Source: Vitrella brassicaformis CCMP3155
Lineage: Eukaryota > Protista > Chromerida
Assembly: GCA_001179505.1 (NCBI GenBank)
Contig: CDMY01000500.1
Span: 667 to 64,666 of the forward strand
Direction of reading: 5' to 3'
DNA: 64,000 bases
The notes beneath the pieces are model-generated. The model was not told where the DNA came from. It saw only the letters and a program-made list of their open reading frames with translations, and did no database searches. The position numbers and the translations under genes were made by a program. This document shows positions 15,933 to 24,289 of this stretch, piece after piece (the first letter of the stretch is position 1; the number at the start of each line of letters is the position of its first letter).

Positions 15933-16881
15933 ATAAGACCAAGAGAATCACCCACGCCCGTTTGTCGATGTTGGTGTCTCCAGACATGTGTGTGCATGTG
16001 TGCGTGTGTGTGCGTTGATGCAGGTTGAGTGTGATGGACATTCCTGCTTTGTTGTATTACAACTGATTCGTCGACTTCCGGCAGAACGTGCATTCACTCA
16101 TCCATGCGGCGGCGACAGGCTGGCCAGTGGCCACCGGCAGTCGGCTGTGTGTCGGTCTGTGTGTGTCTATGTATTAATGTCTGTGTGTGTTGTCGCCTAT
16201 CAAACTTTTGTGCCAACAGTTTTTGTCTGTTTCTCGTCTGTTTTGGTCGAACAAAGTCATGCGAATGTCTCAGTGAAGAGAGAGACACACAATCAGACAC
16301 TCAATGACTGATTGCGTGTCCCACCATGACAGCTGCATGTACGGACATGTGTGATCGACATCCAAACACATGCACTCAATGACAGCTGCATTCAATGACA
16401 TGCGGGAGGTCATTTTGTCACTCTGAGTGCATCTTTTGCTGGCCTCTATGAGCCCTCAAATCCCTTTGGAAAAATTCGCAAATATGTTCATAACATGACC
16501 GCTGAACAGCTGCTCTCAGCTTGCTGTGCCGTCTCAGTGTGCTCTATCATATGCGTGTCAAATAAGTGAGTCAACTTGGGTTGTGAGTGAGAGACATGAG
16601 TTTGACTGCTTGGTAGATCGACCGTTGTGACGGTTTGCTTCACTTGTCTGTACCTTTGCTTGTCAGTTGCTGTATGTTTGCTTGTCCTTCTACGTATTTC
16701 TCTGAAACCGATCGACCATATTGACTCAGAGTTTCGCCATACATATTGACTCACTACGTTGTGTCATCAGGGCATCGCTGGTGGTGGTGGTGCTGGACTC
16801 ACACCAGGACCGATTGCCGCAGTGTGGTGTGATACTTTCTGCATGTGTGTGTGTGTGTAAGAGGCCCAACTCTGGATGTAC

Positions 16882-17181
16882 NNNNNNNNNNNNNNNNNNN
16901 NNNNNNNNNNNNNNNNNNNNNNNNNNNNNNNNNNNNNNNNNNNNNNNNNNNNNNNNNNNNNNNNNNNNNNNNNNNNNNNNNNNNNNNNNNNNNNNNNNNN
17001 NNNNNNNNNNNNNNNNNNNNNNNNNNNNNNNNNNNNNNNNNNNNNNNNNNNNNNNNNNNNNNNNNNNNNNNNNNNNNNNNNNNNNNNNNNNNNNNNNNNN
17101 NNNNNNNNNNNNNNNNNNNNNNNNNNNNNNNNNNNNNNNNNNNNNNNNNNNNNNNNNNNNNNNNNNNNNNNNNNNNNNNNN
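16882..17181. other. Assembly gap (300 N)
   Basis: Run of exactly 300 N. Confidence 1.
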
Positions 17182-17747
17182 TATGGCGCGGGGGGCAAGC
17201 CAAAGTGGTTTCTAGACCTCAACCCAAAGGTACCAACACACACACACACACACATGCGTTCGTTCATTCCCTCTGTCTGTCTGTCTGTCTGTAATGGCAG
17301 GGCCTGGTGCCCGTACTCGTCATCGACGGCCAGCCTGTGGCGGAGAGCGAGGCCACCCTCGACGCCATCGCCGAGCTCGCCCCGTCCCTCGCCACCCCCA
17401 CCCCCAGCAAGCGGCAGCAGTGGCGCGACATGCTCGAGCAGCGGCTGATCCCCGTCGGCAAGGCGGCGGTGCTCAACCCATCATCGAAGAACATGGCCGC
17501 GCTTCGAGTAGTCATTGCCGAGTGGGAGGCTAAGCTGCGGGAGAGGCCGGGGAAGGGCCACTTTCTGTGTGGCGAGTCCTTGTCCATCGCCGACGTGTCA
17601 GCGGTGCCTTTCTGGAGCCGATTGCAGGAGGAGATGGACTGTGTGGGTGCTGAGGAGTTCCCTCTCACGCACGAGTGGCTGGCGGCGTGCAGGGCAAGGG
17701 AGGCGGTCCGCCGCACTCAGATGAGTTCATGGTGGTGGTGGTGGTGA
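17182..17747 (+). CDS. Glutathione S-transferase copy 3 (5' end in gap)
   Basis: Same exons as copy 2 with A->S in CGE(A/S)LS and two synonymous changes; 3' flank diverges after ~17830. Confidence 0.85.
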
Positions 17748-18008: not shown

Positions 18009-21000
18009 ATGGCGTCGTCATCGAGCGAAACGGCGCCTCCGTTTTACCCAGACATCTATGACGTCAACGACGACCTGCTGTCGGACGCCAGCAACCCGCC
18101 CCTGCTGCTGCGCCACGGGCCCCTGCTCAAGATGCAGAAGGCCATCCATCGACTGCAGGTAGGTCACACAGCTGCCACACACACGACTTATGACACACAG
18201 ACAGACACCACACTGATCAGTGAGTGTGATGAATATGTCTGTCTGTTTCAGGAGCACCACGGATTCCTCTTCAACAACTGCCTGGTGAACACATTATAAA
18301 TCTCGCGCATCTATGCGTGTGCGAATTTCCATCACCTTTGTTGTGCAGGTCATCACCCACCCCTGTCAGCCGACCAACCGCTTCAAGTGGAAGCGGTCCG
18401 TCAGCTTCCGACACGCCGTGGTGAGGGACGTCCGCGAGGCCACGCAGGCCGTCAACGGCATCGGACACGGCATCGTCCTGCTCGAAAATCTGGTGCTCTC
18501 AACAGACAACCGAAGGCATGATAGAATGCCGTCTGTCTGTCTGTTTGTTTGTCTGTCTGTCTGCGTGTCTGTCTGTCCTAAGGAGGGCATCACGCGGCAG
18601 TCTCTCTTGTGTTGGCGATCTCATCAGGAGAAGAAGGAGTGGCTGAGTGCTCTACGGCGCGCCCTGGCCACCTTCGCGCACCCCAACGACACCCCCGCTC
18701 CCGTCCCTCAAGCAGGGGAGCCCTCCCAGCGTCTCAAAGGCCCGCTGCCCCCCCGTCTGGACGACATGACAGTGCTGGTGGCGCACGACCTGGTCAAGGA
18801 CACGGTGCACGCCTTCGCATTGGAGGTCCGTGTGCGCAGACACACCCACAGACAGACAGAGAACCATTGGCTGTGTCTGTCCCCCCCTCCCTCGATGCGC
18901 TTGTCAGAACAAGTGGATACTGATCCAGGAGTGGATACAGCATGCCGTCAACAGGCGAGGCGGGGCGGACATCGGCGACCTCAACGACACTGACGAGTGG
19001 GGGTGGTCGGCCGCACACGTCGCTGCACGGGTCGGCGGTGATGCTCATTCTGTCCTACAACGTCACCGTGTGTGTGTTGTGGGCATGCAGGTGGGCAGCC
19101 ACGCGGCCATGACAGTGCTGGTTGACGGCGGCGTGGACGTTGACGGTGTCAGTGCTCAAGGCGAGACCCCTCTCCTTGTCGCATGTCGTGTTGGCAACGC
19201 GAAGATCGTCCGTCTGCTGCTGCGCAACGGCGCCAACCCACGGGCTGTAAGTATACAGTGCATTTCACCGCGAGGGAGAAACGTGTGTCTTGGATTGTTC
19301 TGCTTGTTCTTCATTTTCATCAGGTTGACAAGGGCGGGAGGAACGTCGTGTACCTGGCAGCATCTCACCCCTCTGCCAAGGGTGAGCTCAGGGCACCACA
19401 CCACACACTGATTGCCCAAATGGAAGGGGCTTGTGTGGTTTGGTGGCGGTGTGTGGTTGGTCAGTGGCGGGCACGACCCTCAAGGTCCTTCGGATGAGCC
19501 ACGTCAACCTCAACGGGTGCGTGTGCCGCCAACCACAAGACGCTTCGTCCACCCCACACCTCTCAGCGCTCCATGTCGCCATACTCAGTGAGCACAGAGG
19601 GGGGGGAGGAAGGGAGGGAGGGAGATCTGTGAGAAAATGTATGTTATGTGTGTTCAGATCACGACGTCGAGATGGTCGGCCGTCTGCTGTCAGTGGGCTG
19701 TGACGCCAACATACAACTGGCCGACGGCTCCGGCAGGACAGCCGTCCACCTCGCTGTCCAGACAGACCACCAGTGAGATGAACAAATTACGGGTGCCACG
19801 GCGCTCGCGCGTGTGTGTACGTTGCTGCTTGGATCAATCAGGCTGCTGGTGCAGTCTGTGCTGGAGTTCGGCGGCCAGCCAAACCTCCGCGACGCCGAGG
19901 GCCTGTCCCCCCTCCACCACTGCCGATCGCTCGAGTGCGTCATCGTCTTGGTGGAATACGGCGCCAGAGGGTGGGAGCAGCTCCCCAATCAGGTGCTCAC
20001 ACCACACCACACCACACAACACACAAGACGCACATTCATCCTCGTGTGTGTGTGTGTGTGTGTGTCTGGGTTCTCGCCCGCCGTCAGATACGGCAGCAGC
20101 TGGGCCTTCCCCTCGAGGAAAAGGACGGCGAGCCTCCGACCGAGGAGGCCGCTGCGGCCCTCGAGGCCGTCAGGAGTGCGCGGCAGAAGTATCGGACTAA
20201 GAAATATGAAGACCACAGAGGCGAGCGGATCTCACTGCCGTGGTGAGCACCCACATACGATGGGGTGGGTGGGGTGCATGCGTCAGATGATCGGATGGAG
20301 CGTGTGTGTGTGTATGTGTATGTGTGTGTGTGTGTGTGTGTGTGCAGGTGGGCGGTGACGTCATCAGCTCGGTGGACGAACGACGCCGATGTGGATGGCT
20401 GTCAGGCGTGCGGAGTCACCTTCACCGTCCGCATCAGACGACACCATTGTACGTCAGTCACACCAACCAGTCCACGCCTCCCCTCTCCCCTCTCCCCTCT
20501 CTCATGCCATCTCTTGATCAGGTCGTTCGTGCGGCCTGTGTGTCTGCGACGAGTGCTCGTCGAAGCGAGCCGTGGTGCCCCACCCCTGCAAAGAGCCCGA
20601 CAGGAGAGCATCCGGCTCACAGCAGCAGCAGTCGTCATCCCCCGACGGCTCACCAACCGCAGCAGCTGGTGGCAGAGGCAGGGGGGCCGGCCGGGCCGAC
20701 CCAAGCTATGACCCATTGGCAGGGTATCAGACCTCCATTGAGTCGATGGACGCCGATGCAGAGGTGGAGCGGCAGGAGGCAGAGCAAGACGACCAGGCAC
20801 CGCAGCCGGACAGAAGGAGGAGCGTGTTGGCTGGTGAGGGGGAGAGACGGGAGATCCTCATCTCTCTGTCTGTGTGCCCACTGTGTGTCTGTGAAGGTCT
20901 GTTCACGGGCCGCAGGCAGAGCGCCATGTCGCCTGTGAGTGTCACCGAGGCGGCGCCGGCGGCGTCGATGGTCCCGCGGTCGAGGCTGCCGATTGCCAAG

Positions 21001-22054
21001 GGTGCGTCGGGGTACCTGCGGACATGCGACGCCTGCTTCAATTTCCTCCAACACTTCGACGTCAGGCATGCACCACACCCACATGAGCGACCGATCAATC
21101 CGTTCCATGTGATGTGTTTAGGTGGAGGCTGCCGACGAGACACAGCTGTCGTCGGCCAACGATGAGAACCAGGTGGGTGTCAGGACACCTACTACCCCAC
21201 CCAGCCATCTCGTGTCGCCCCTCTCATTTCTGTCTGTCTGTCTGTCTGTCTGTCTGTCCATGCGATGCAGATGGCATCTGCCGACGACTGGGTGTTCCTA
21301 GACAACAGCCCCGCGTCACGCCAGCACCGCAACGAGCCGCCCCGAACACCCTCAGGCCGCTCGCTGGAGCCCCCGGCCGCCGCCATGTCCATACCCATCC
21401 CCACACAAACACCCGGGTCATCGCAACAGCGGCTGTCTGCCGATGAAGACGAGATCGCCTCCCTCGTCGGTGACGATGACGAAGGCGGTCCCAACACAGA
21501 CAGCCGGAGGGACAGTGGTGGGCTGGGGTCGGTCGCGAGGTCGTTCCTGGGTGCGATGGGTCTGGGGGGTGGGGGGAAGGGGCGGACTCGGATGAGTGTG
21601 GCTGAGGGGGCCGTGGCTGCGGCGGCGAGAGAGAAACAGCCCCGCCCCCAGCCGCCCCCGCGAGCCAACACCGCCCACACGCTCAAGTACCACCAGGTCA
21701 GTAAGCAGATGAGAGCGTTGTTTTGTTGTTGGTTGTTGGCACGGCGTATGGGTCCTCCTGCTGTGTGTTGGTGCTCCATTCATTCAGAATGCGACTGATG
21801 CGGCAATGGAGTCGGCAGCCGCAGCAAGGGCAAAAGTGGCAGAGAGAGGTACTGAGGGGCGAACGAGGCCGTGTGCTGTCACGTCTGTGTGTGTGTGTTG
21901 GCCTGTGTGTGGCGTGTGGGGTGTAGGTGAGGCGTTGGTGTCACTGAAGGGGACGACCGATCGGCTGGCTGACAATGCCAAGCAATACTATGAGACGGCG
22001 AGGCAGCTCGCCGAGGCGCAGAGGGGATGGGGCAGGGGACGAGGGAAGAGGTGA
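18009..22054 (+). CDS. Multi-exon PH-like domain + ankyrin repeats + FYVE zinc finger + C-terminal R-SNARE-like coiled coil
   Basis: PH-like: LLRHGPLLKM...CWRSHQEKKEWLSALRRAL. Ankyrin: DEWGWSAAHVAAR, QGETPLLVACRVGNAKIVRLLLRNGANP, SGRTAVHLAV, EGLSPLH. FYVE: WTND..CQAC...RRHHC|RSCGLCVCDEC...TCDAC. End: KVAERG|EALVSLKGTTDRLADNAKQY. Confidence 0.85.
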
Positions 22055-22773
22055 TATTATTGTGATGGTGCAAGTATCGTGGGTGTGTATCGTTGCCGCG
22101 ATGCGCTGGTGCAATGAACGCGACAGCTTGGTGTGTGTGCACTAGATCGTTCATGCCAGTATGTCACATAATTGAGTAATTGGTCATGCAATCGGGTCGC
22201 TGGAAAACACGCAGATGGAATCATGTCTGCAGACAGTTCACACAACAGCACAAAAGAACGCCACGCCACTCACTGCAAGAATTGCATGCATCTCGTCGCG
22301 CTATTCTAGTTGCCTTTGTTACGACATAACAACACATCCCAGTACTGCACGACAGCATGCAGCACAGACACGCACACACACATGCCAGCCATCCAGCCAT
22401 GCCAACATGCAGCAGGGACACAGCTGCAGCAGCCACCCGTATATGTCTTTCGCCCTCCCCGCCGCCATTGTCTACACGGGGTTGTCTACATGGTGCCCAA
22501 CCCCCCGCCCCAAAGAAAAAAGGTAAGGCCAATCGATAACGCACGCCCACAATAGGCCTCCCTCCCTCCCTCCCTCCCTCCAAAGCCTCCGAAGATAGCT
22601 AGTTTTATGTACACCCACACACGCATGGCATGAACAGATGCAATCAATGCCATTCGCCAGCCCCACCACTTCGAATGAATGGCACTCTGATTCACAATGG
22701 CCGCCCGGCCGGCCGGCTCTGGAGGTTGTCATGTGATGCATCACGACAACCGTCTATCTGTCTGTCTGTCTGT

Positions 22774-24289
22774 CTACTGCATCTGCATGACGAACATCCG
22801 CCGCCCACTCGCCGAGGTGACCGTCTCGATGCCGATACGGCGCAGCAAACATTCCTCGCAGAAGCATGGCTCCTGCACACATGAGAAAACAACACAACAC
22901 AACACCACACAAGAGCACACACCCACAGATGTGATGCGCGGGGGCGGGGTGACTGGCCAGGCGTATCTCTCACCTGCTGTGCGGGATACTCGGCGTTCAT
23001 GAGTGTGTCGGTCAGGTTGTACTGGTCGAGGATGGGACGGGCAGCCTCCACAGCGACGGGATGGCGAGCGGCGATGGCCGTGGCGCCCTCCACTGTGCTC
23101 TCCGTCGTGTATATGGCCACATGTCCGTTGCCGACCTGACGCGCACACCAATGGGACACACACACATAGATATGGGGCGGCACGGCACACCGCAGCTTCC
23201 ACTCACTCACCGAAATGAAACTGTTGACGGTGTCGCCGTGTTTCAGCCCCTTGAGCATGATGATTCGCCGCAGGCCATCGTCAGCGCCCCAACGGTAGCT
23301 GAGAGACAAGCAGGAGACTCCATACCTACGCATCGATCCATCTCAGTCAGTGTTCTGCACCGCACCGACCTGTCGTGATAGTCCACCGCCGTGTATCCCT
23401 CCAACCTGTCCGTCAGGAGCGAACGGAAACGTTCGTCCCTCTGACCGACACACCAGACGCAACACTCACTTCTGGTGAGAACTCGGTGGTGAGTACGGAT
23501 CGTGGGGGATATATGTGTGTGCCCACCTTGTTGAGGTCTTCGCTAACGACCACGGTCTCCCGCACCCCCTCCCCCGCTTGCTTCCCGCAGCTGTTGATGA
23601 GGTGCCACACCAGCATGGCGCTGAAGTGGGGAAACGTCAGCGTGCTCTGTACCGTCCGCACGGGCGGATCCTCTGGGTTGTAGCTGGCCCGATACATGTG
23701 GTTCACGCACATCTCGCTGAGCTGCACGACGTGGAATCGCAGTCCGAGGATGCTGTAGTTGCCTTCTCCGTCGCTGCGCTGCAGTGCCATGCTCCTTCCC
23801 CGGTGCGTCAGCTGGTCTCCGATGATGCTGTATGCCGCCATGGCGAGCGGCAGGCGGTTCGTCGACGGGGCGGGGCATGATGACACGATGAGACGTTTCT
23901 GCTGTGGAGGGGTGATGCGGTAGATGTTGGCCATGCGTATGAACGACGCAATGACGCTCCACTCATACGTGCCCTGCTCAAGCCTAAGAGGTGCAAAGAC
24001 GCACAGAAACGTAGATCAATGGATCCTTGGGCACGAACGGTAGTGTCTGTTGGACTTACATATCAGCAGAATTCGATAGCCACCCCGCGTCATCCTCACC
24101 GGCACCCTTGATCTCAAGCAGGCCATCGAGAGAGTGGCGAGCGAGGGGGGTATTGATGCGCTCTATGACACGCGCCATTGGAACCTTCTTTCCCCGGGCC
24201 CTTGCGAGCTTTGAAGCGATCATCGGTGTCTTCCTTCCCGTCTCCATTTCTTCTTCCGGAGCTCTCTGTGGGGCATTCCCTGCCTGCAT
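22774..24289 (-). CDS. Six-exon member of the same lineage-specific family as 3804-4829
   Basis: Spliced: ...ADM|LEQGTYEWSVIASFIRMANIYRITP...LPLAMAAYSIIGDQLT...RDERFRSLLTD...VGNGHVAIYTTE... aligns block by block with the 3804-4829 protein; five GT-AG introns keep frame. Confidence 0.7.

What the first reader, a model, noticed from the sequence alone, without database searches (positions are those of the whole stretch)
18009..22054. PH-ankyrin-FYVE protein ending in a TM-less R-SNARE motif
Seen: C-terminal AMESAAAARAKVAERGEALVSLKGTTDRLADNAKQYYETARQL aligns with the synaptobrevin core ([26 protein letters not shown]) with the zero-layer Arg, and there is no TM anchor. Established: amisyn (PH plus R-SNARE) and tomosyn are soluble R-SNARE decoys; Vam7 uses a PI3P-binding PX domain in place of a TM anchor; FYVE binds PI3P. 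Inference: a lipid-targeted soluble R-SNARE for endosomal fusion or its inhibition, in a four-domain combination I do not recognise from model organisms.
Basis: partly seen in the sequence, partly recalled or inferred. Interest (0 to 1): 0.7.

Follow-up and report, generated by a model that had tools for sequence, protein, structure and literature searches.

The report
Lipid-targeted protein ending in anchorless R-SNARE
An alga (Vitrella brassicaformis) has a gene that joins three membrane-targeting or scaffold modules (PH, ankyrin repeats, FYVE finger) to a real membrane-fusion (R-SNARE) helix with no in-frame membrane anchor, so it probably regulates endosome fusion and does not drive it.

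Summary
Observation confirmed. Window 18009-22054 (+) holds an 18-exon GT-AG gene whose 897-aa product is identical to the public record CEM18449.1 / A0A0G4FUP4 of Vitrella brassicaformis, named only as a FYVE-type protein.

- **Domains:** Pfam finds PH (25.2 bits), ankyrin repeats (90 bits) and FYVE (48.6-57.8 bits). The closest solved FYVE is EEA1, and here the finger is split by a 118-aa insert.
- **R-SNARE tail:** residues 826-897 score 26.3 bits on Synaptobrevin (cut-off 26.4). Their three best matches among solved structures are all R-SNAREs: VAMP4 (E 3.3e-4, ungapped across both predicted exon junctions) and Snc1 twice. Arg855 sits at the zero layer. Layers +1 to +8 are canonical; layers -2 to -6 are Ala/Thr/His.
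- **Anchor:** there is no transmembrane segment and no cysteine in frame. A transmembrane-like stretch does lie in the +1 frame directly after the stop codon (background 0.3-0.9% under criteria chosen after seeing it). An independent read assembly has the same DNA.
- **Relatives:** none found with this PH domain, tail or architecture.

Best reading: a PI3P-tethered, non-fusogenic R-SNARE competitor or placeholder. This is a new variant of the tomosyn/amisyn kind, seen in one species. The scan had not noted it before on other DNA.

The parts
18009..22054 (+). Whole gene: 18 exons, 17 GT-AG introns of 60-105 nt, 897 codons plus TGA. Product is CEM18449.1 / UniProt A0A0G4FUP4.
   Evidence: Model built. 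It is identical to P0001. The annotated gene span is the same in CDMY01000500.1. In-frame GC3 is the highest codon position in 14 of 18 exons, with exons 6, 11, 13 and 17 as the exceptions.
18105..18666 (+). PH domain, aa 33-137, spread over exons 1-4.
   Evidence: Pfam PH 25.2 bits (cut-off 25.1) and SOS1_NGEF_PH 26.9 bits (cut-off 27.7) on P0001. The weak best solved match is the Exo84 PH domain.
18977..19986 (+). Ankyrin repeat block, aa about 214-430, exons 5-10.
   Evidence: Pfam Ank_2 90.1 bits and Ank 69.7 bits. Exon-wise hits.
20370..20598 (+). FYVE finger, N-terminal part (aa 492-543), with the WTND and RRHHCR motifs.
   Evidence: Pfam FYVE 48.6-57.8 bits. EEA1 FYVE 1hyi_A E 4.3e-14, chain residues 2-52. 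Motifs located.
20599..21015 (+). 118-aa low-complexity insert inside the FYVE finger (aa 544-661), spanning intron 13.
   Evidence: The EEA1 alignment breaks between KKP and VRVC. Alternative larger introns that would remove the insert exist on paper but lack good acceptors. The public annotation keeps the insert.
21016..21060 (+). FYVE finger, C-terminal part (aa 662-676), with an RTC motif in place of RVC and the last Cys pair.
   Evidence: Second aligned stretch to EEA1 residues 53-64..
21277..21303 (+). SADDWVFLD, a candidate Atg8/LC3-interacting (LIR-like) motif at the start of exon 16.
   Evidence: It is the only match in the protein to an acidic-[WFY]xx[LIV] pattern. It lies in a stretch predicted disordered. 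Untested.
21271..21681 (+). Disordered linker (aa 694-830, most of exon 16).
   Evidence: No Pfam hit. AlphaFold2 pLDDT about 50 with no secondary structure. No homologue.
21682..22009 (+). R-SNARE motif, aa 831-883 (layers -7 to +8), encoded by the end of exon 16, exon 17 and exon 18. Introns 16 (21697-21787) and 17 (21849-21926) lie inside this span.
   Evidence: Pfam Synaptobrevin 26.3 bits. VAMP4 and Snc1 alignments. Layer residues are L H T A A A V R L L T L A Y A L. AlphaFold2 predicts a single helix over aa 827-890, with pLDDT up to 96. The three nearest named ESM Atlas clusters are all Synaptobrevin.
21845..21847 (+). Codon of the zero-layer Arg855, one base before the exon 17 donor.
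   Evidence: Aligned to the zero-layer Arg of VAMP4 and Snc1. Coordinates.
22019..22054 (+). Basic, Trp-containing end QRGWGRGRGKR plus the TGA stop. It resembles an R-SNARE juxtamembrane stretch.
   Evidence: HMMER aligns W890-x-R-G to the W-W-R-G of VAMP4. No Cys is present for lipidation.
22053..22145 (+). +1-frame ORF that starts on the last two bases of the stop codon: Asp, then a 16-residue hydrophobic stretch, then 13 more residues and TAG. It looks like a tail anchor.
   Evidence: 16-residue Kyte-Doolittle mean 2.45. Background 0.3-0.9% of positions under matched criteria. Codon usage is not coding-like. No downstream RNA structure. The DNA is identical in a Logan contig of run ERR558149.

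Best explanation
The gene encodes a cytosolic, peripherally membrane-bound protein. Its EEA1-type FYVE finger, probably helped by the PH domain, would hold it on PI3P-rich endosomal or vacuolar membranes, and the ankyrin block offers a protein-docking surface. A disordered linker of about 150 residues presents a C-terminal R-SNARE helix. That helix is homologous to brevin-type R-SNAREs (VAMP4, Snc1). It has a zero-layer Arg and fully canonical C-terminal layers, but a weakened, alanine-rich N-terminal half and no C-terminal anchor. It could therefore bind endosomal Qa/Qb/Qc acceptor complexes without passing zippering force to a membrane. On this reading it acts as a local competitor or placeholder for the anchored R-SNARE, as tomosyn and amisyn do at the plasma membrane and the Hrs coiled coil does on early endosomes. 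Shown here: gene structure, domain identities, R-SNARE homology, and absence of an in-frame anchor. Inferred: PI3P binding, Q-SNARE pairing, and inhibitory or placeholder action.
For: The 18-exon model is identical to the public protein. FYVE carries WxxD, RRHHCR and R(T)C with 8 zinc-ligand Cys positions, and EEA1 is the best solved relative at E 4e-14. Synaptobrevin scores 26.3 bits, E 6.7e-6, on the tail. VAMP4 E 3.3e-4 and Snc1 are the three best hits among 177,635 solved sequences, aligned without gaps across two predicted exon junctions. The nearest named ESM feature clusters are all Synaptobrevin. AlphaFold2 gives one 64-residue helix after a disordered linker. There is no hydrophobic segment and no Cys in the tail. 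Precedents: amisyn is a PH domain plus an anchorless R-SNARE-like coil that competes with synaptobrevin-2 (PMC10670990). The Hrs coiled coil displaces VAMP2 from an endosomal SNARE complex (PMC2172712). Tomosyn and amisyn are described as R-SNARE mimics (PMC11730294).
Against: No orthologue was found, so conservation of the tail cannot be shown. The Synaptobrevin score is 0.1 bit under Pfam's cut-off. Layers -2 to -6 are A/A/A/T/H, which may make pairing weak. A transmembrane-like ORF abuts the stop codon in the +1 frame, so the anchorless state may be recent, partial or wrong. Inhibitory action cannot be told apart from fusion-promoting action by sequence.
Confidence: 0.5

Rival explanations
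1. The SNARE helix is an evolutionary leftover or a generic coiled coil. The protein works only as a PI3P/ankyrin scaffold, and the tail at most mediates self-association, not Q-SNARE pairing.
For: N-terminal layers -2 to -6 are degenerate. It is a single-species orphan with no conservation evidence. The Pfam score is just under the cut-off.
Against: Layers -1 to +8, the zero-layer Arg and the RGE-x-L signature are all intact and match VAMP4 and Snc1. A decaying relic would not be expected to keep nine consecutive canonical layers.
Confidence: 0.2
2. The protein is really membrane-anchored. The hydrophobic stretch in the +1 frame right after the stop (22053-22145) would be joined to the SNARE motif, either because the deposited base at the stop is not in the mRNA or by +1 ribosomal frameshifting at AGG-UGA-U. 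The result would be a fusogenic tail-anchored R-SNARE with a PH-ankyrin-FYVE N-terminal region, possibly alongside the soluble form.
For: A 16-residue hydrophobic stretch (Kyte-Doolittle mean 2.45) starts one residue into this ORF, then 13 residues and a stop follow. That is the layout expected after an R-SNARE juxtamembrane stretch. Such a layout occurs at 0.3-0.9% of positions in this window under matched criteria. The UGA-U context recalls the antizyme +1 site (own knowledge).
Against: An independent Logan assembly of run ERR558149 has identical DNA. Codon usage of the +1 ORF is not coding-like. The downstream RNA folds no better than shuffles, z -0.12. The criteria were fitted after seeing the site, and a looser test gives 1.5-4.6%. 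The stretch is short and contains Gln and Ser.
Confidence: 0.12
3. Gene-model artefact. Exons 16-18 form a separate small gene, with Met694 falling exactly on the first codon of exon 16, and encode a 204-aa anchorless R-SNARE. The FYVE protein would then end earlier.
For: Exon 16 starts with ATG. The link from exon 14 to exon 16 runs through a 17-codon exon and has no homology support. No RNA evidence was available. The size would resemble amisyn at 210 aa.
Against: Only 98 nt separate exon 15 from exon 16, and this gap carries the same (CTGT)n tract and GT-AG ends as the gene's other introns. The frame is kept. The public annotation joins them.
Confidence: 0.1
4. Chance resemblance: an amphipathic helix that happens to look like synaptobrevin.
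For: Single-sequence searches of the last exon alone found nothing among solved structures. Coiled coils often cross-match.
Against: Three methods agree on the same family. HMMER reports no composition bias (0.0) for the VAMP4 and Snc1 3b5n_A alignments. E 6.7e-6 over 24,736 models is about 3e-10 per model.
Confidence: 0.08

Closest known systems
Amisyn (STXBP6) and tomosyn (STXBP5), regulatory R-SNARE mimics
   Same: A C-terminal R-SNARE-like coil with no membrane anchor. Amisyn also uses an N-terminal PH domain for transient lipid targeting and competes with synaptobrevin-2 (PMC10670990; PMC11730294).
   Different: Here there is no WD40/Lgl domain. The architecture is PH-ankyrin-FYVE, the likely lipid is PI3P and not PI(4,5)P2, and the lineage is alveolate. 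The motif matches brevins (VAMP4, Snc1), and no tomosyn or amisyn chain appeared among solved-structure hits at E up to 10. The N-terminal layers are alanine-rich.
VAMP4 and yeast Snc1 (brevin-type R-SNAREs)
   Same: These are the closest sequence relatives of the motif. They share the zero-layer Arg, the KV-x-ERGE-x-L core, the +1 to +8 layers and a Trp-containing basic juxtamembrane stretch.
   Different: They are small tail-anchored proteins. Here the motif ends an 897-aa multidomain protein and the in-frame anchor is missing.
Vam7 (PX domain plus Qc-SNARE, yeast vacuole)
   Different: Vam7 is a Qc SNARE with a PX domain. This protein is an R-SNARE with FYVE and PH domains. Pfam finds no PX domain.
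Hrs (VHS-FYVE-coiled coil)
   Same: A FYVE-bearing endosomal protein whose coiled coil binds Q-SNAREs and displaces VAMP2, which inhibits early endosome fusion (PMC2172712).
   Different: The Hrs coil is not a recognisable R-SNARE motif. No VHS or UIM domain is found here.
Ykt6
   Same: An R-SNARE without a transmembrane segment that acts in endosomal, vacuolar and autophagosomal fusion (PMC6168255, listed).
   Different: By own knowledge, Ykt6 has a longin domain and C-terminal lipidated cysteines. Here Pfam finds no longin domain and the last 100 residues hold no Cys.
EEA1 FYVE finger; rabankyrin-5 (ANKFY1) and oomycete Ank-FYVE proteins
   Same: The FYVE finger is EEA1-like. Ankyrin plus FYVE combinations exist elsewhere.
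   Different: The finger carries a 118-aa insert. None of those proteins carries a SNARE motif in the listed Pfam content.

Membership tests
R-SNARE (Pfam Synaptobrevin PF00957 / v-SNARE coiled-coil homology) | Arginine at the central zero layer | tested here: met
   Arg855 aligns with the zero-layer Arg of VAMP4 and Snc1. Heptad register.
R-SNARE (Pfam Synaptobrevin PF00957 / v-SNARE coiled-coil homology) | About 53 residues with 16 heptad layers (-7 to +8) of hydrophobic residues | tested here: inconclusive
   Layers -7, -1 and +1 to +8 are canonical (L, V, L, L, T, L, A, Y, A, L). Layers -6 to -2 are H, T, A, A, A. AlphaFold2 predicts one continuous helix over aa 827-890.
R-SNARE (Pfam Synaptobrevin PF00957 / v-SNARE coiled-coil homology) | Profile score at or above the curated cut-off | tested here: inconclusive
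   26.3 bits against a cut-off of 26.4 for the tail alone, and 20.4 bits within the whole protein. Only profile positions 23-60 of 89 match, and the transmembrane part of the model has nothing to match.
R-SNARE (Pfam Synaptobrevin PF00957 / v-SNARE coiled-coil homology) | Significant sequence similarity to experimentally defined R-SNAREs | tested here: met
   VAMP4 2nps_A E 3.3e-4 over query 6-68. Snc1 3b5n_A and 9cru_J come next, and the three best hits are all R-SNAREs.
R-SNARE (Pfam Synaptobrevin PF00957 / v-SNARE coiled-coil homology) | C-terminal transmembrane or lipid anchor | tested here: not met
   The maximum 19-residue Kyte-Doolittle mean is 1.2 and there is no Cys in the last 100 aa. 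A transmembrane-like stretch exists only in the +1 frame after the stop.
R-SNARE (Pfam Synaptobrevin PF00957 / v-SNARE coiled-coil homology) | Forms a four-helix QabcR complex | not testable with these tools
   Needs recombinant proteins.
Tomosyn/amisyn regulatory R-SNAREs | Anchorless C-terminal R-SNARE-like motif | tested here: met
Tomosyn/amisyn regulatory R-SNAREs | Homologous N-terminal region (Lgl-type WD40 propellers in tomosyn; the amisyn N-terminal domain) | tested here: not met
   Pfam finds no WD40 or Lgl family on P0001. No tomosyn or amisyn chain appears among solved-structure hits of the tail. The protein works like this family but is not a member.
FYVE finger (PI3P-binding type) | WxxD, R(R/K)HHCR and RVC motifs with eight zinc-binding cysteines, and a profile score above the cut-off | tested here: met
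   WTND at 493, RRHHCR at 514, RTC at 663 (Thr in place of Val), and Cys at 502, 505, 518, 521, 526, 529, 665 and 668. Pfam 48.6-57.8 bits against 27.8. EEA1 E 4.3e-14. A 118-aa insert precedes the RTC motif.
FYVE finger (PI3P-binding type) | Binds PI3P | not testable with these tools
   Needs a liposome or lipid-strip assay.
PH domain | Profile score above the cut-off | tested here: met
   PH 25.2 bits against 25.1, a marginal pass. SOS1_NGEF_PH 26.9 against 27.7. Lipid specificity is unknown.
Vam7-type soluble SNARE | PX domain and a Qc (Gln zero-layer) motif | tested here: not met
   No PX domain or Q-SNARE family hit. The zero layer is Arg.

The most novel reading that the evidence does not exclude
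The stop codon sits exactly between an R-SNARE motif and its former or alternative tail anchor. Skipping one base (the T of TGA at 22052) would link the motif to a hydrophobic tail-anchor-like segment. On this reading the gene either shows the recent birth of a soluble R-SNARE decoy from a membrane-anchored giant R-SNARE, or makes both soluble and anchored forms by +1 frameshifting at AGG-UGA-U. The second case would switch one gene between fusion inhibitor and fusogen.
Probability: 0.15. Interest if true: 0.8.

Novelty: new variant of a known kind. Interest (0 to 1): 0.55.

Why it matters
Anchorless R-SNARE regulators are known mainly from animals and fungi (tomosyn, amisyn), where they act at the plasma membrane. 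This would be an independent invention in a relative of the apicomplexan parasites, tied to PI3P membranes through a FYVE finger. It would show that lipid-addressed SNARE decoys are a recurrent solution. It would also give a handle on endosome, vacuole or autophagy-like fusion control in the chromerid/apicomplexan lineage. The weak N-terminal half and canonical C-terminal half resemble the C-terminal synaptobrevin fragments used in vitro to pre-structure acceptor complexes (own knowledge). That makes a concrete placeholder mechanism testable. The out-of-frame tail anchor, if real, would show how such a regulator arises from a fusogenic SNARE.

Tried and rejected
- **Run finder:** it was closed. 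No RNA or DNA reads could be laid, and read laying was not used because it needs run ids from that tool.
- **Last exon against solved structures:** single-sequence searches of the last exon, and of the intron-containing ORF, gave only noise. The signal appeared only with the spliced tail.
- **Orthologue searches:**
  - An exhaustive HMMER search with the PH exons returned only the protein itself.
  - Word-based searches with exon 16, the tail and the whole protein returned nothing, only the protein itself, and the protein itself plus generic ankyrin proteins, respectively.
  - A metagenome scan with the tail returned nothing.
  - These searches have length and word limits. Shorter relatives, under about 490 aa, were never searched with the tail.
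- **Removing the FYVE insert:** larger introns that would do this are possible on paper, but they have poor acceptor contexts and contradict the annotation.
- **Downstream anchor exon:** none found. The only other hydrophobic window within 1.3 kb lies antisense to the next gene.
- **+1 frameshift support:** downstream RNA structure scores z -0.12 and codon usage is not coding-like. Neither supports it.
- **The +1 peptide alone:** no Pfam hit, as expected for a transmembrane stretch.
- **Literature:** searches for this domain combination found no report.
- **Joined model:** it was never typed into a search tool. Exons were searched by reference. The joined protein was searched only through the public record P0001 once a tool had returned it. 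In-script joining was used only for translation, hydropathy and codon statistics.
- none occurred.
Full report
**Organism and record**

Earlier notes of this scan name the genome as Vitrella brassicaformis. I confirmed this. The protein encoded here is CEM18449.1 / UniProt A0A0G4FUP4 of V. brassicaformis CCMP3155, on contig CDMY01000500.1. Its sources call it only an 'unnamed protein product' or a 'FYVE-type domain-containing protein'.

**Gene model**

From the raw sequence I derived 18 exons between 18009 and 22054 on the + strand. All 17 introns are GT-AG and 60-105 nt long. Together the exons give an open frame of 897 codons.

- In 14 of the 18 exons, GC3 is the highest of the three codon positions in the assigned frame. 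The exceptions are exons 6, 11, 13 and 17.
- An exhaustive HMMER search with the PH exons, given by reference, returned one protein from 1.84 billion representatives. This is P0001, 897 aa, and it is letter-for-letter my joined model.
- This is agreement between predictions, not RNA evidence.
- Internal support comes from domains that continue across junctions without gaps:
  - the FYVE finger across junction 12/13, aligned to EEA1;
  - the R-SNARE motif across junctions 16/17 and 17/18, aligned to VAMP4 without a gap in that stretch.
- The weakest link is exon 14 to exon 16 through the 17-codon exon 15. Exon 16 begins with ATG, so a separate small gene cannot be excluded. However, the 98-nt gap has the GT-AG ends and the (CTGT)n tract seen in this gene's other introns.

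**How the spliced model was searched**

The joined sequence was never typed into a tool. It was searched only as the public record P0001 once a tool had returned that record. Joining inside scripts served only translation, hydropathy and codon statistics.

**Domains**

Pfam results on P0001:

| Family | Bits | Cut-off | Residues |
|---|---|---|---|
| Ank_2 | 90.1 | 27.3 | best stretch 214-284; whole ankyrin block about 214-430 |
| Ank | 69.7 | 21.1 | best stretch 255-286 |
| FYVE | 48.6 (57.8 on the isolated region) | 27.8 | 492-538 |
| PH | 25.2 | 25.1 | 35-137 |
| SOS1_NGEF_PH | 26.9 | 27.7 | 33-135 |
| Synaptobrevin | 20.4 | 26.4 | 850-886 |

- The best solved relative of the FYVE finger is EEA1 (1hyi_A, E 4.3e-14).
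- The FYVE finger keeps WTND, RRHHCR and RTC, and the eight zinc-ligand cysteines.
- A 118-aa low-complexity insert sits between the position of EEA1's KKP and its VRVC.
- The PH domain has only weak solved relatives, with Exo84 best at E 0.11.

**The C-terminal segment**

- The last exon alone scores 15.7-15.9 bits on Synaptobrevin.
- The spliced tail scores 25.9-26.3 bits, E 6.7e-6 to 8.9e-6, on profile positions 23-60 of 89. That is 0.1 bit below the gathering cut-off. The remaining profile positions, which by my own knowledge of the family cover the transmembrane helix, have nothing to match here.
- phmmer of residues 826-897 against 177,635 solved sequences gives VAMP4 of the early-endosomal SNARE complex (2nps_A, 24.6 bits, E 3.3e-4, query 6-68 to chain 10-70). 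Yeast Snc1 follows (3b5n_A, 9cru_J). All three best hits are R-SNAREs.
- The alignments place Arg855 on the zero-layer Arg. They share the KV-x-ERGE-x-L core, the L-x-DNA stretch and even a Trp-x-Arg-Gly juxtamembrane stretch.
- The protein-language-model search of the last exon also lists only Synaptobrevin clusters as its three nearest named neighbours (0.86). That score makes it a lead, not proof.
- In heptad register the layers from -7 to +8 read L, H, T, A, A, A, V, R, L, L, T, L, A, Y, A, L. The C-terminal nine layers are canonical. Layers -6 to -2 are small or polar.
- AlphaFold2, run on a single sequence, predicts residues 827-890 as one helix. pLDDT reaches the 90s in the C-terminal half. 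The preceding stretch of about 150 residues is predicted disordered.
- I take the R-SNARE homology as established at about 90%.

**Anchor**

In the annotated frame the protein ends QRGWGRGRGKR. No 19-residue window exceeds a Kyte-Doolittle mean of 1.2, and the last 100 residues hold no cysteine for lipidation. The observation 'no TM anchor' therefore holds.

The +1 frame complicates this. Starting on the GA of the TGA stop (22053), it reads Asp, then a 16-residue hydrophobic stretch (mean 2.45), then 13 residues and a stop. That is the layout of a tail anchor at the spacing expected after an R-SNARE juxtamembrane stretch.

- Under criteria matched to the site, 0.3-0.9% of positions in this window show such a layout. 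A looser criterion gives 1.5-4.6%. The criteria were chosen after seeing the site.
- An independent Logan assembly of run ERR558149 is 100% identical over 7,373 bases including this site. A slip in the reference assembly is therefore unlikely.
- Codon usage of the +1 ORF is not coding-like.
- The downstream RNA folds no better than shuffles.
- I rate a used or recently lost anchor at about 12-15% and report it as a rival and as the novel case.

**Relatives**

I found none with this PH domain. None turned up with this tail among proteins of 0.55-1.75 times its length. The whole-length search returned only generic ankyrin proteins, none with FYVE. The metagenome scan found nothing. The ESM Atlas neighbours are PH-ArfGAP-ankyrin proteins, an oomycete Ank-FYVE cluster and rabankyrin-5, and none lists Synaptobrevin. 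These searches are limited, so 'unique' means 'not found'. Literature searches found no report of this combination.

**Mechanism**

1. The FYVE motifs argue for PI3P binding. This follows from established knowledge of EEA1-type fingers.
2. The R-SNARE helix lies at the far end of a long disordered linker and has no C-terminal anchor. It can bind Q-SNARE acceptor complexes but cannot couple zippering to bilayer merger. This is inference.
3. The nearest functional precedents are:
   - amisyn, a PH domain plus an anchorless R-SNARE-like coil that competes with synaptobrevin-2 (PMC10670990);
   - tomosyn (PMC11730294);
   - the coiled coil of the FYVE protein Hrs, which displaces VAMP2 from an endosomal SNARE complex (PMC2172712).
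4. A weak N-terminal half with a canonical C-terminal half also fits a placeholder role. Such a placeholder would pre-structure the acceptor complex and be displaced by the anchored R-SNARE, which nucleates from the N-terminal end. This rests on my own knowledge of C-terminal synaptobrevin fragments in vitro and is untested here.
5. The SADDWVFLD motif at 696-704 is a candidate Atg8-interacting motif. It hints at autophagy-type or plastid-directed traffic and is pure speculation.

**Verdict**

- The protein works like a tomosyn/amisyn-type regulator but is not a member of that family. Its motif belongs with brevin-type R-SNAREs.
- It is a new variant of a known kind, so far in one species, and the protein is already deposited but not recognised as a SNARE.

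Noticed in passing
window 21277-21303: SADDWVFLD at the start of exon 16 fits the acidic-W-x-x-L core of Atg8/LC3-interacting motifs. It is the only such match in the protein and lies in a stretch predicted disordered.
   Followed up: partly
window 18493-18582, 19031-19090, 20834-20896, 21849-21926: Four of the 17 introns (3, 5, 13 and 17) are multiples of three and free of stops, so retaining them would keep the reading frame. Retention of intron 17 would insert 26 residues right after the zero-layer Arg of the SNARE motif.
   Followed up: no
window 20599-21015: A 118-aa Ser/Gln/Gly/Asp-rich insert splits the FYVE finger just before its last zinc-ligand pair. EEA1 has no residues at this position.
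   Followed up: partly
window 18159-21270 (introns 1, 3, 4, 15; also 10 and 11): Introns of this gene carry (CTGT)n / (CAGA)n tracts or (GT)n runs near their 3' ends. This may be a genome-wide intron signature useful for gene modelling.
   Followed up: no
window about 16880-17190: A run of N (an assembly gap) lies just upstream, next to or inside the neighbouring GST_C-like gene (annotated product 191 aa).
   Followed up: no
window 22774-24178 (-): The convergent downstream gene (annotated product 331 aa) has no Pfam family on record. Its 3' end faces this gene across about 720 nt.
   Followed up: no
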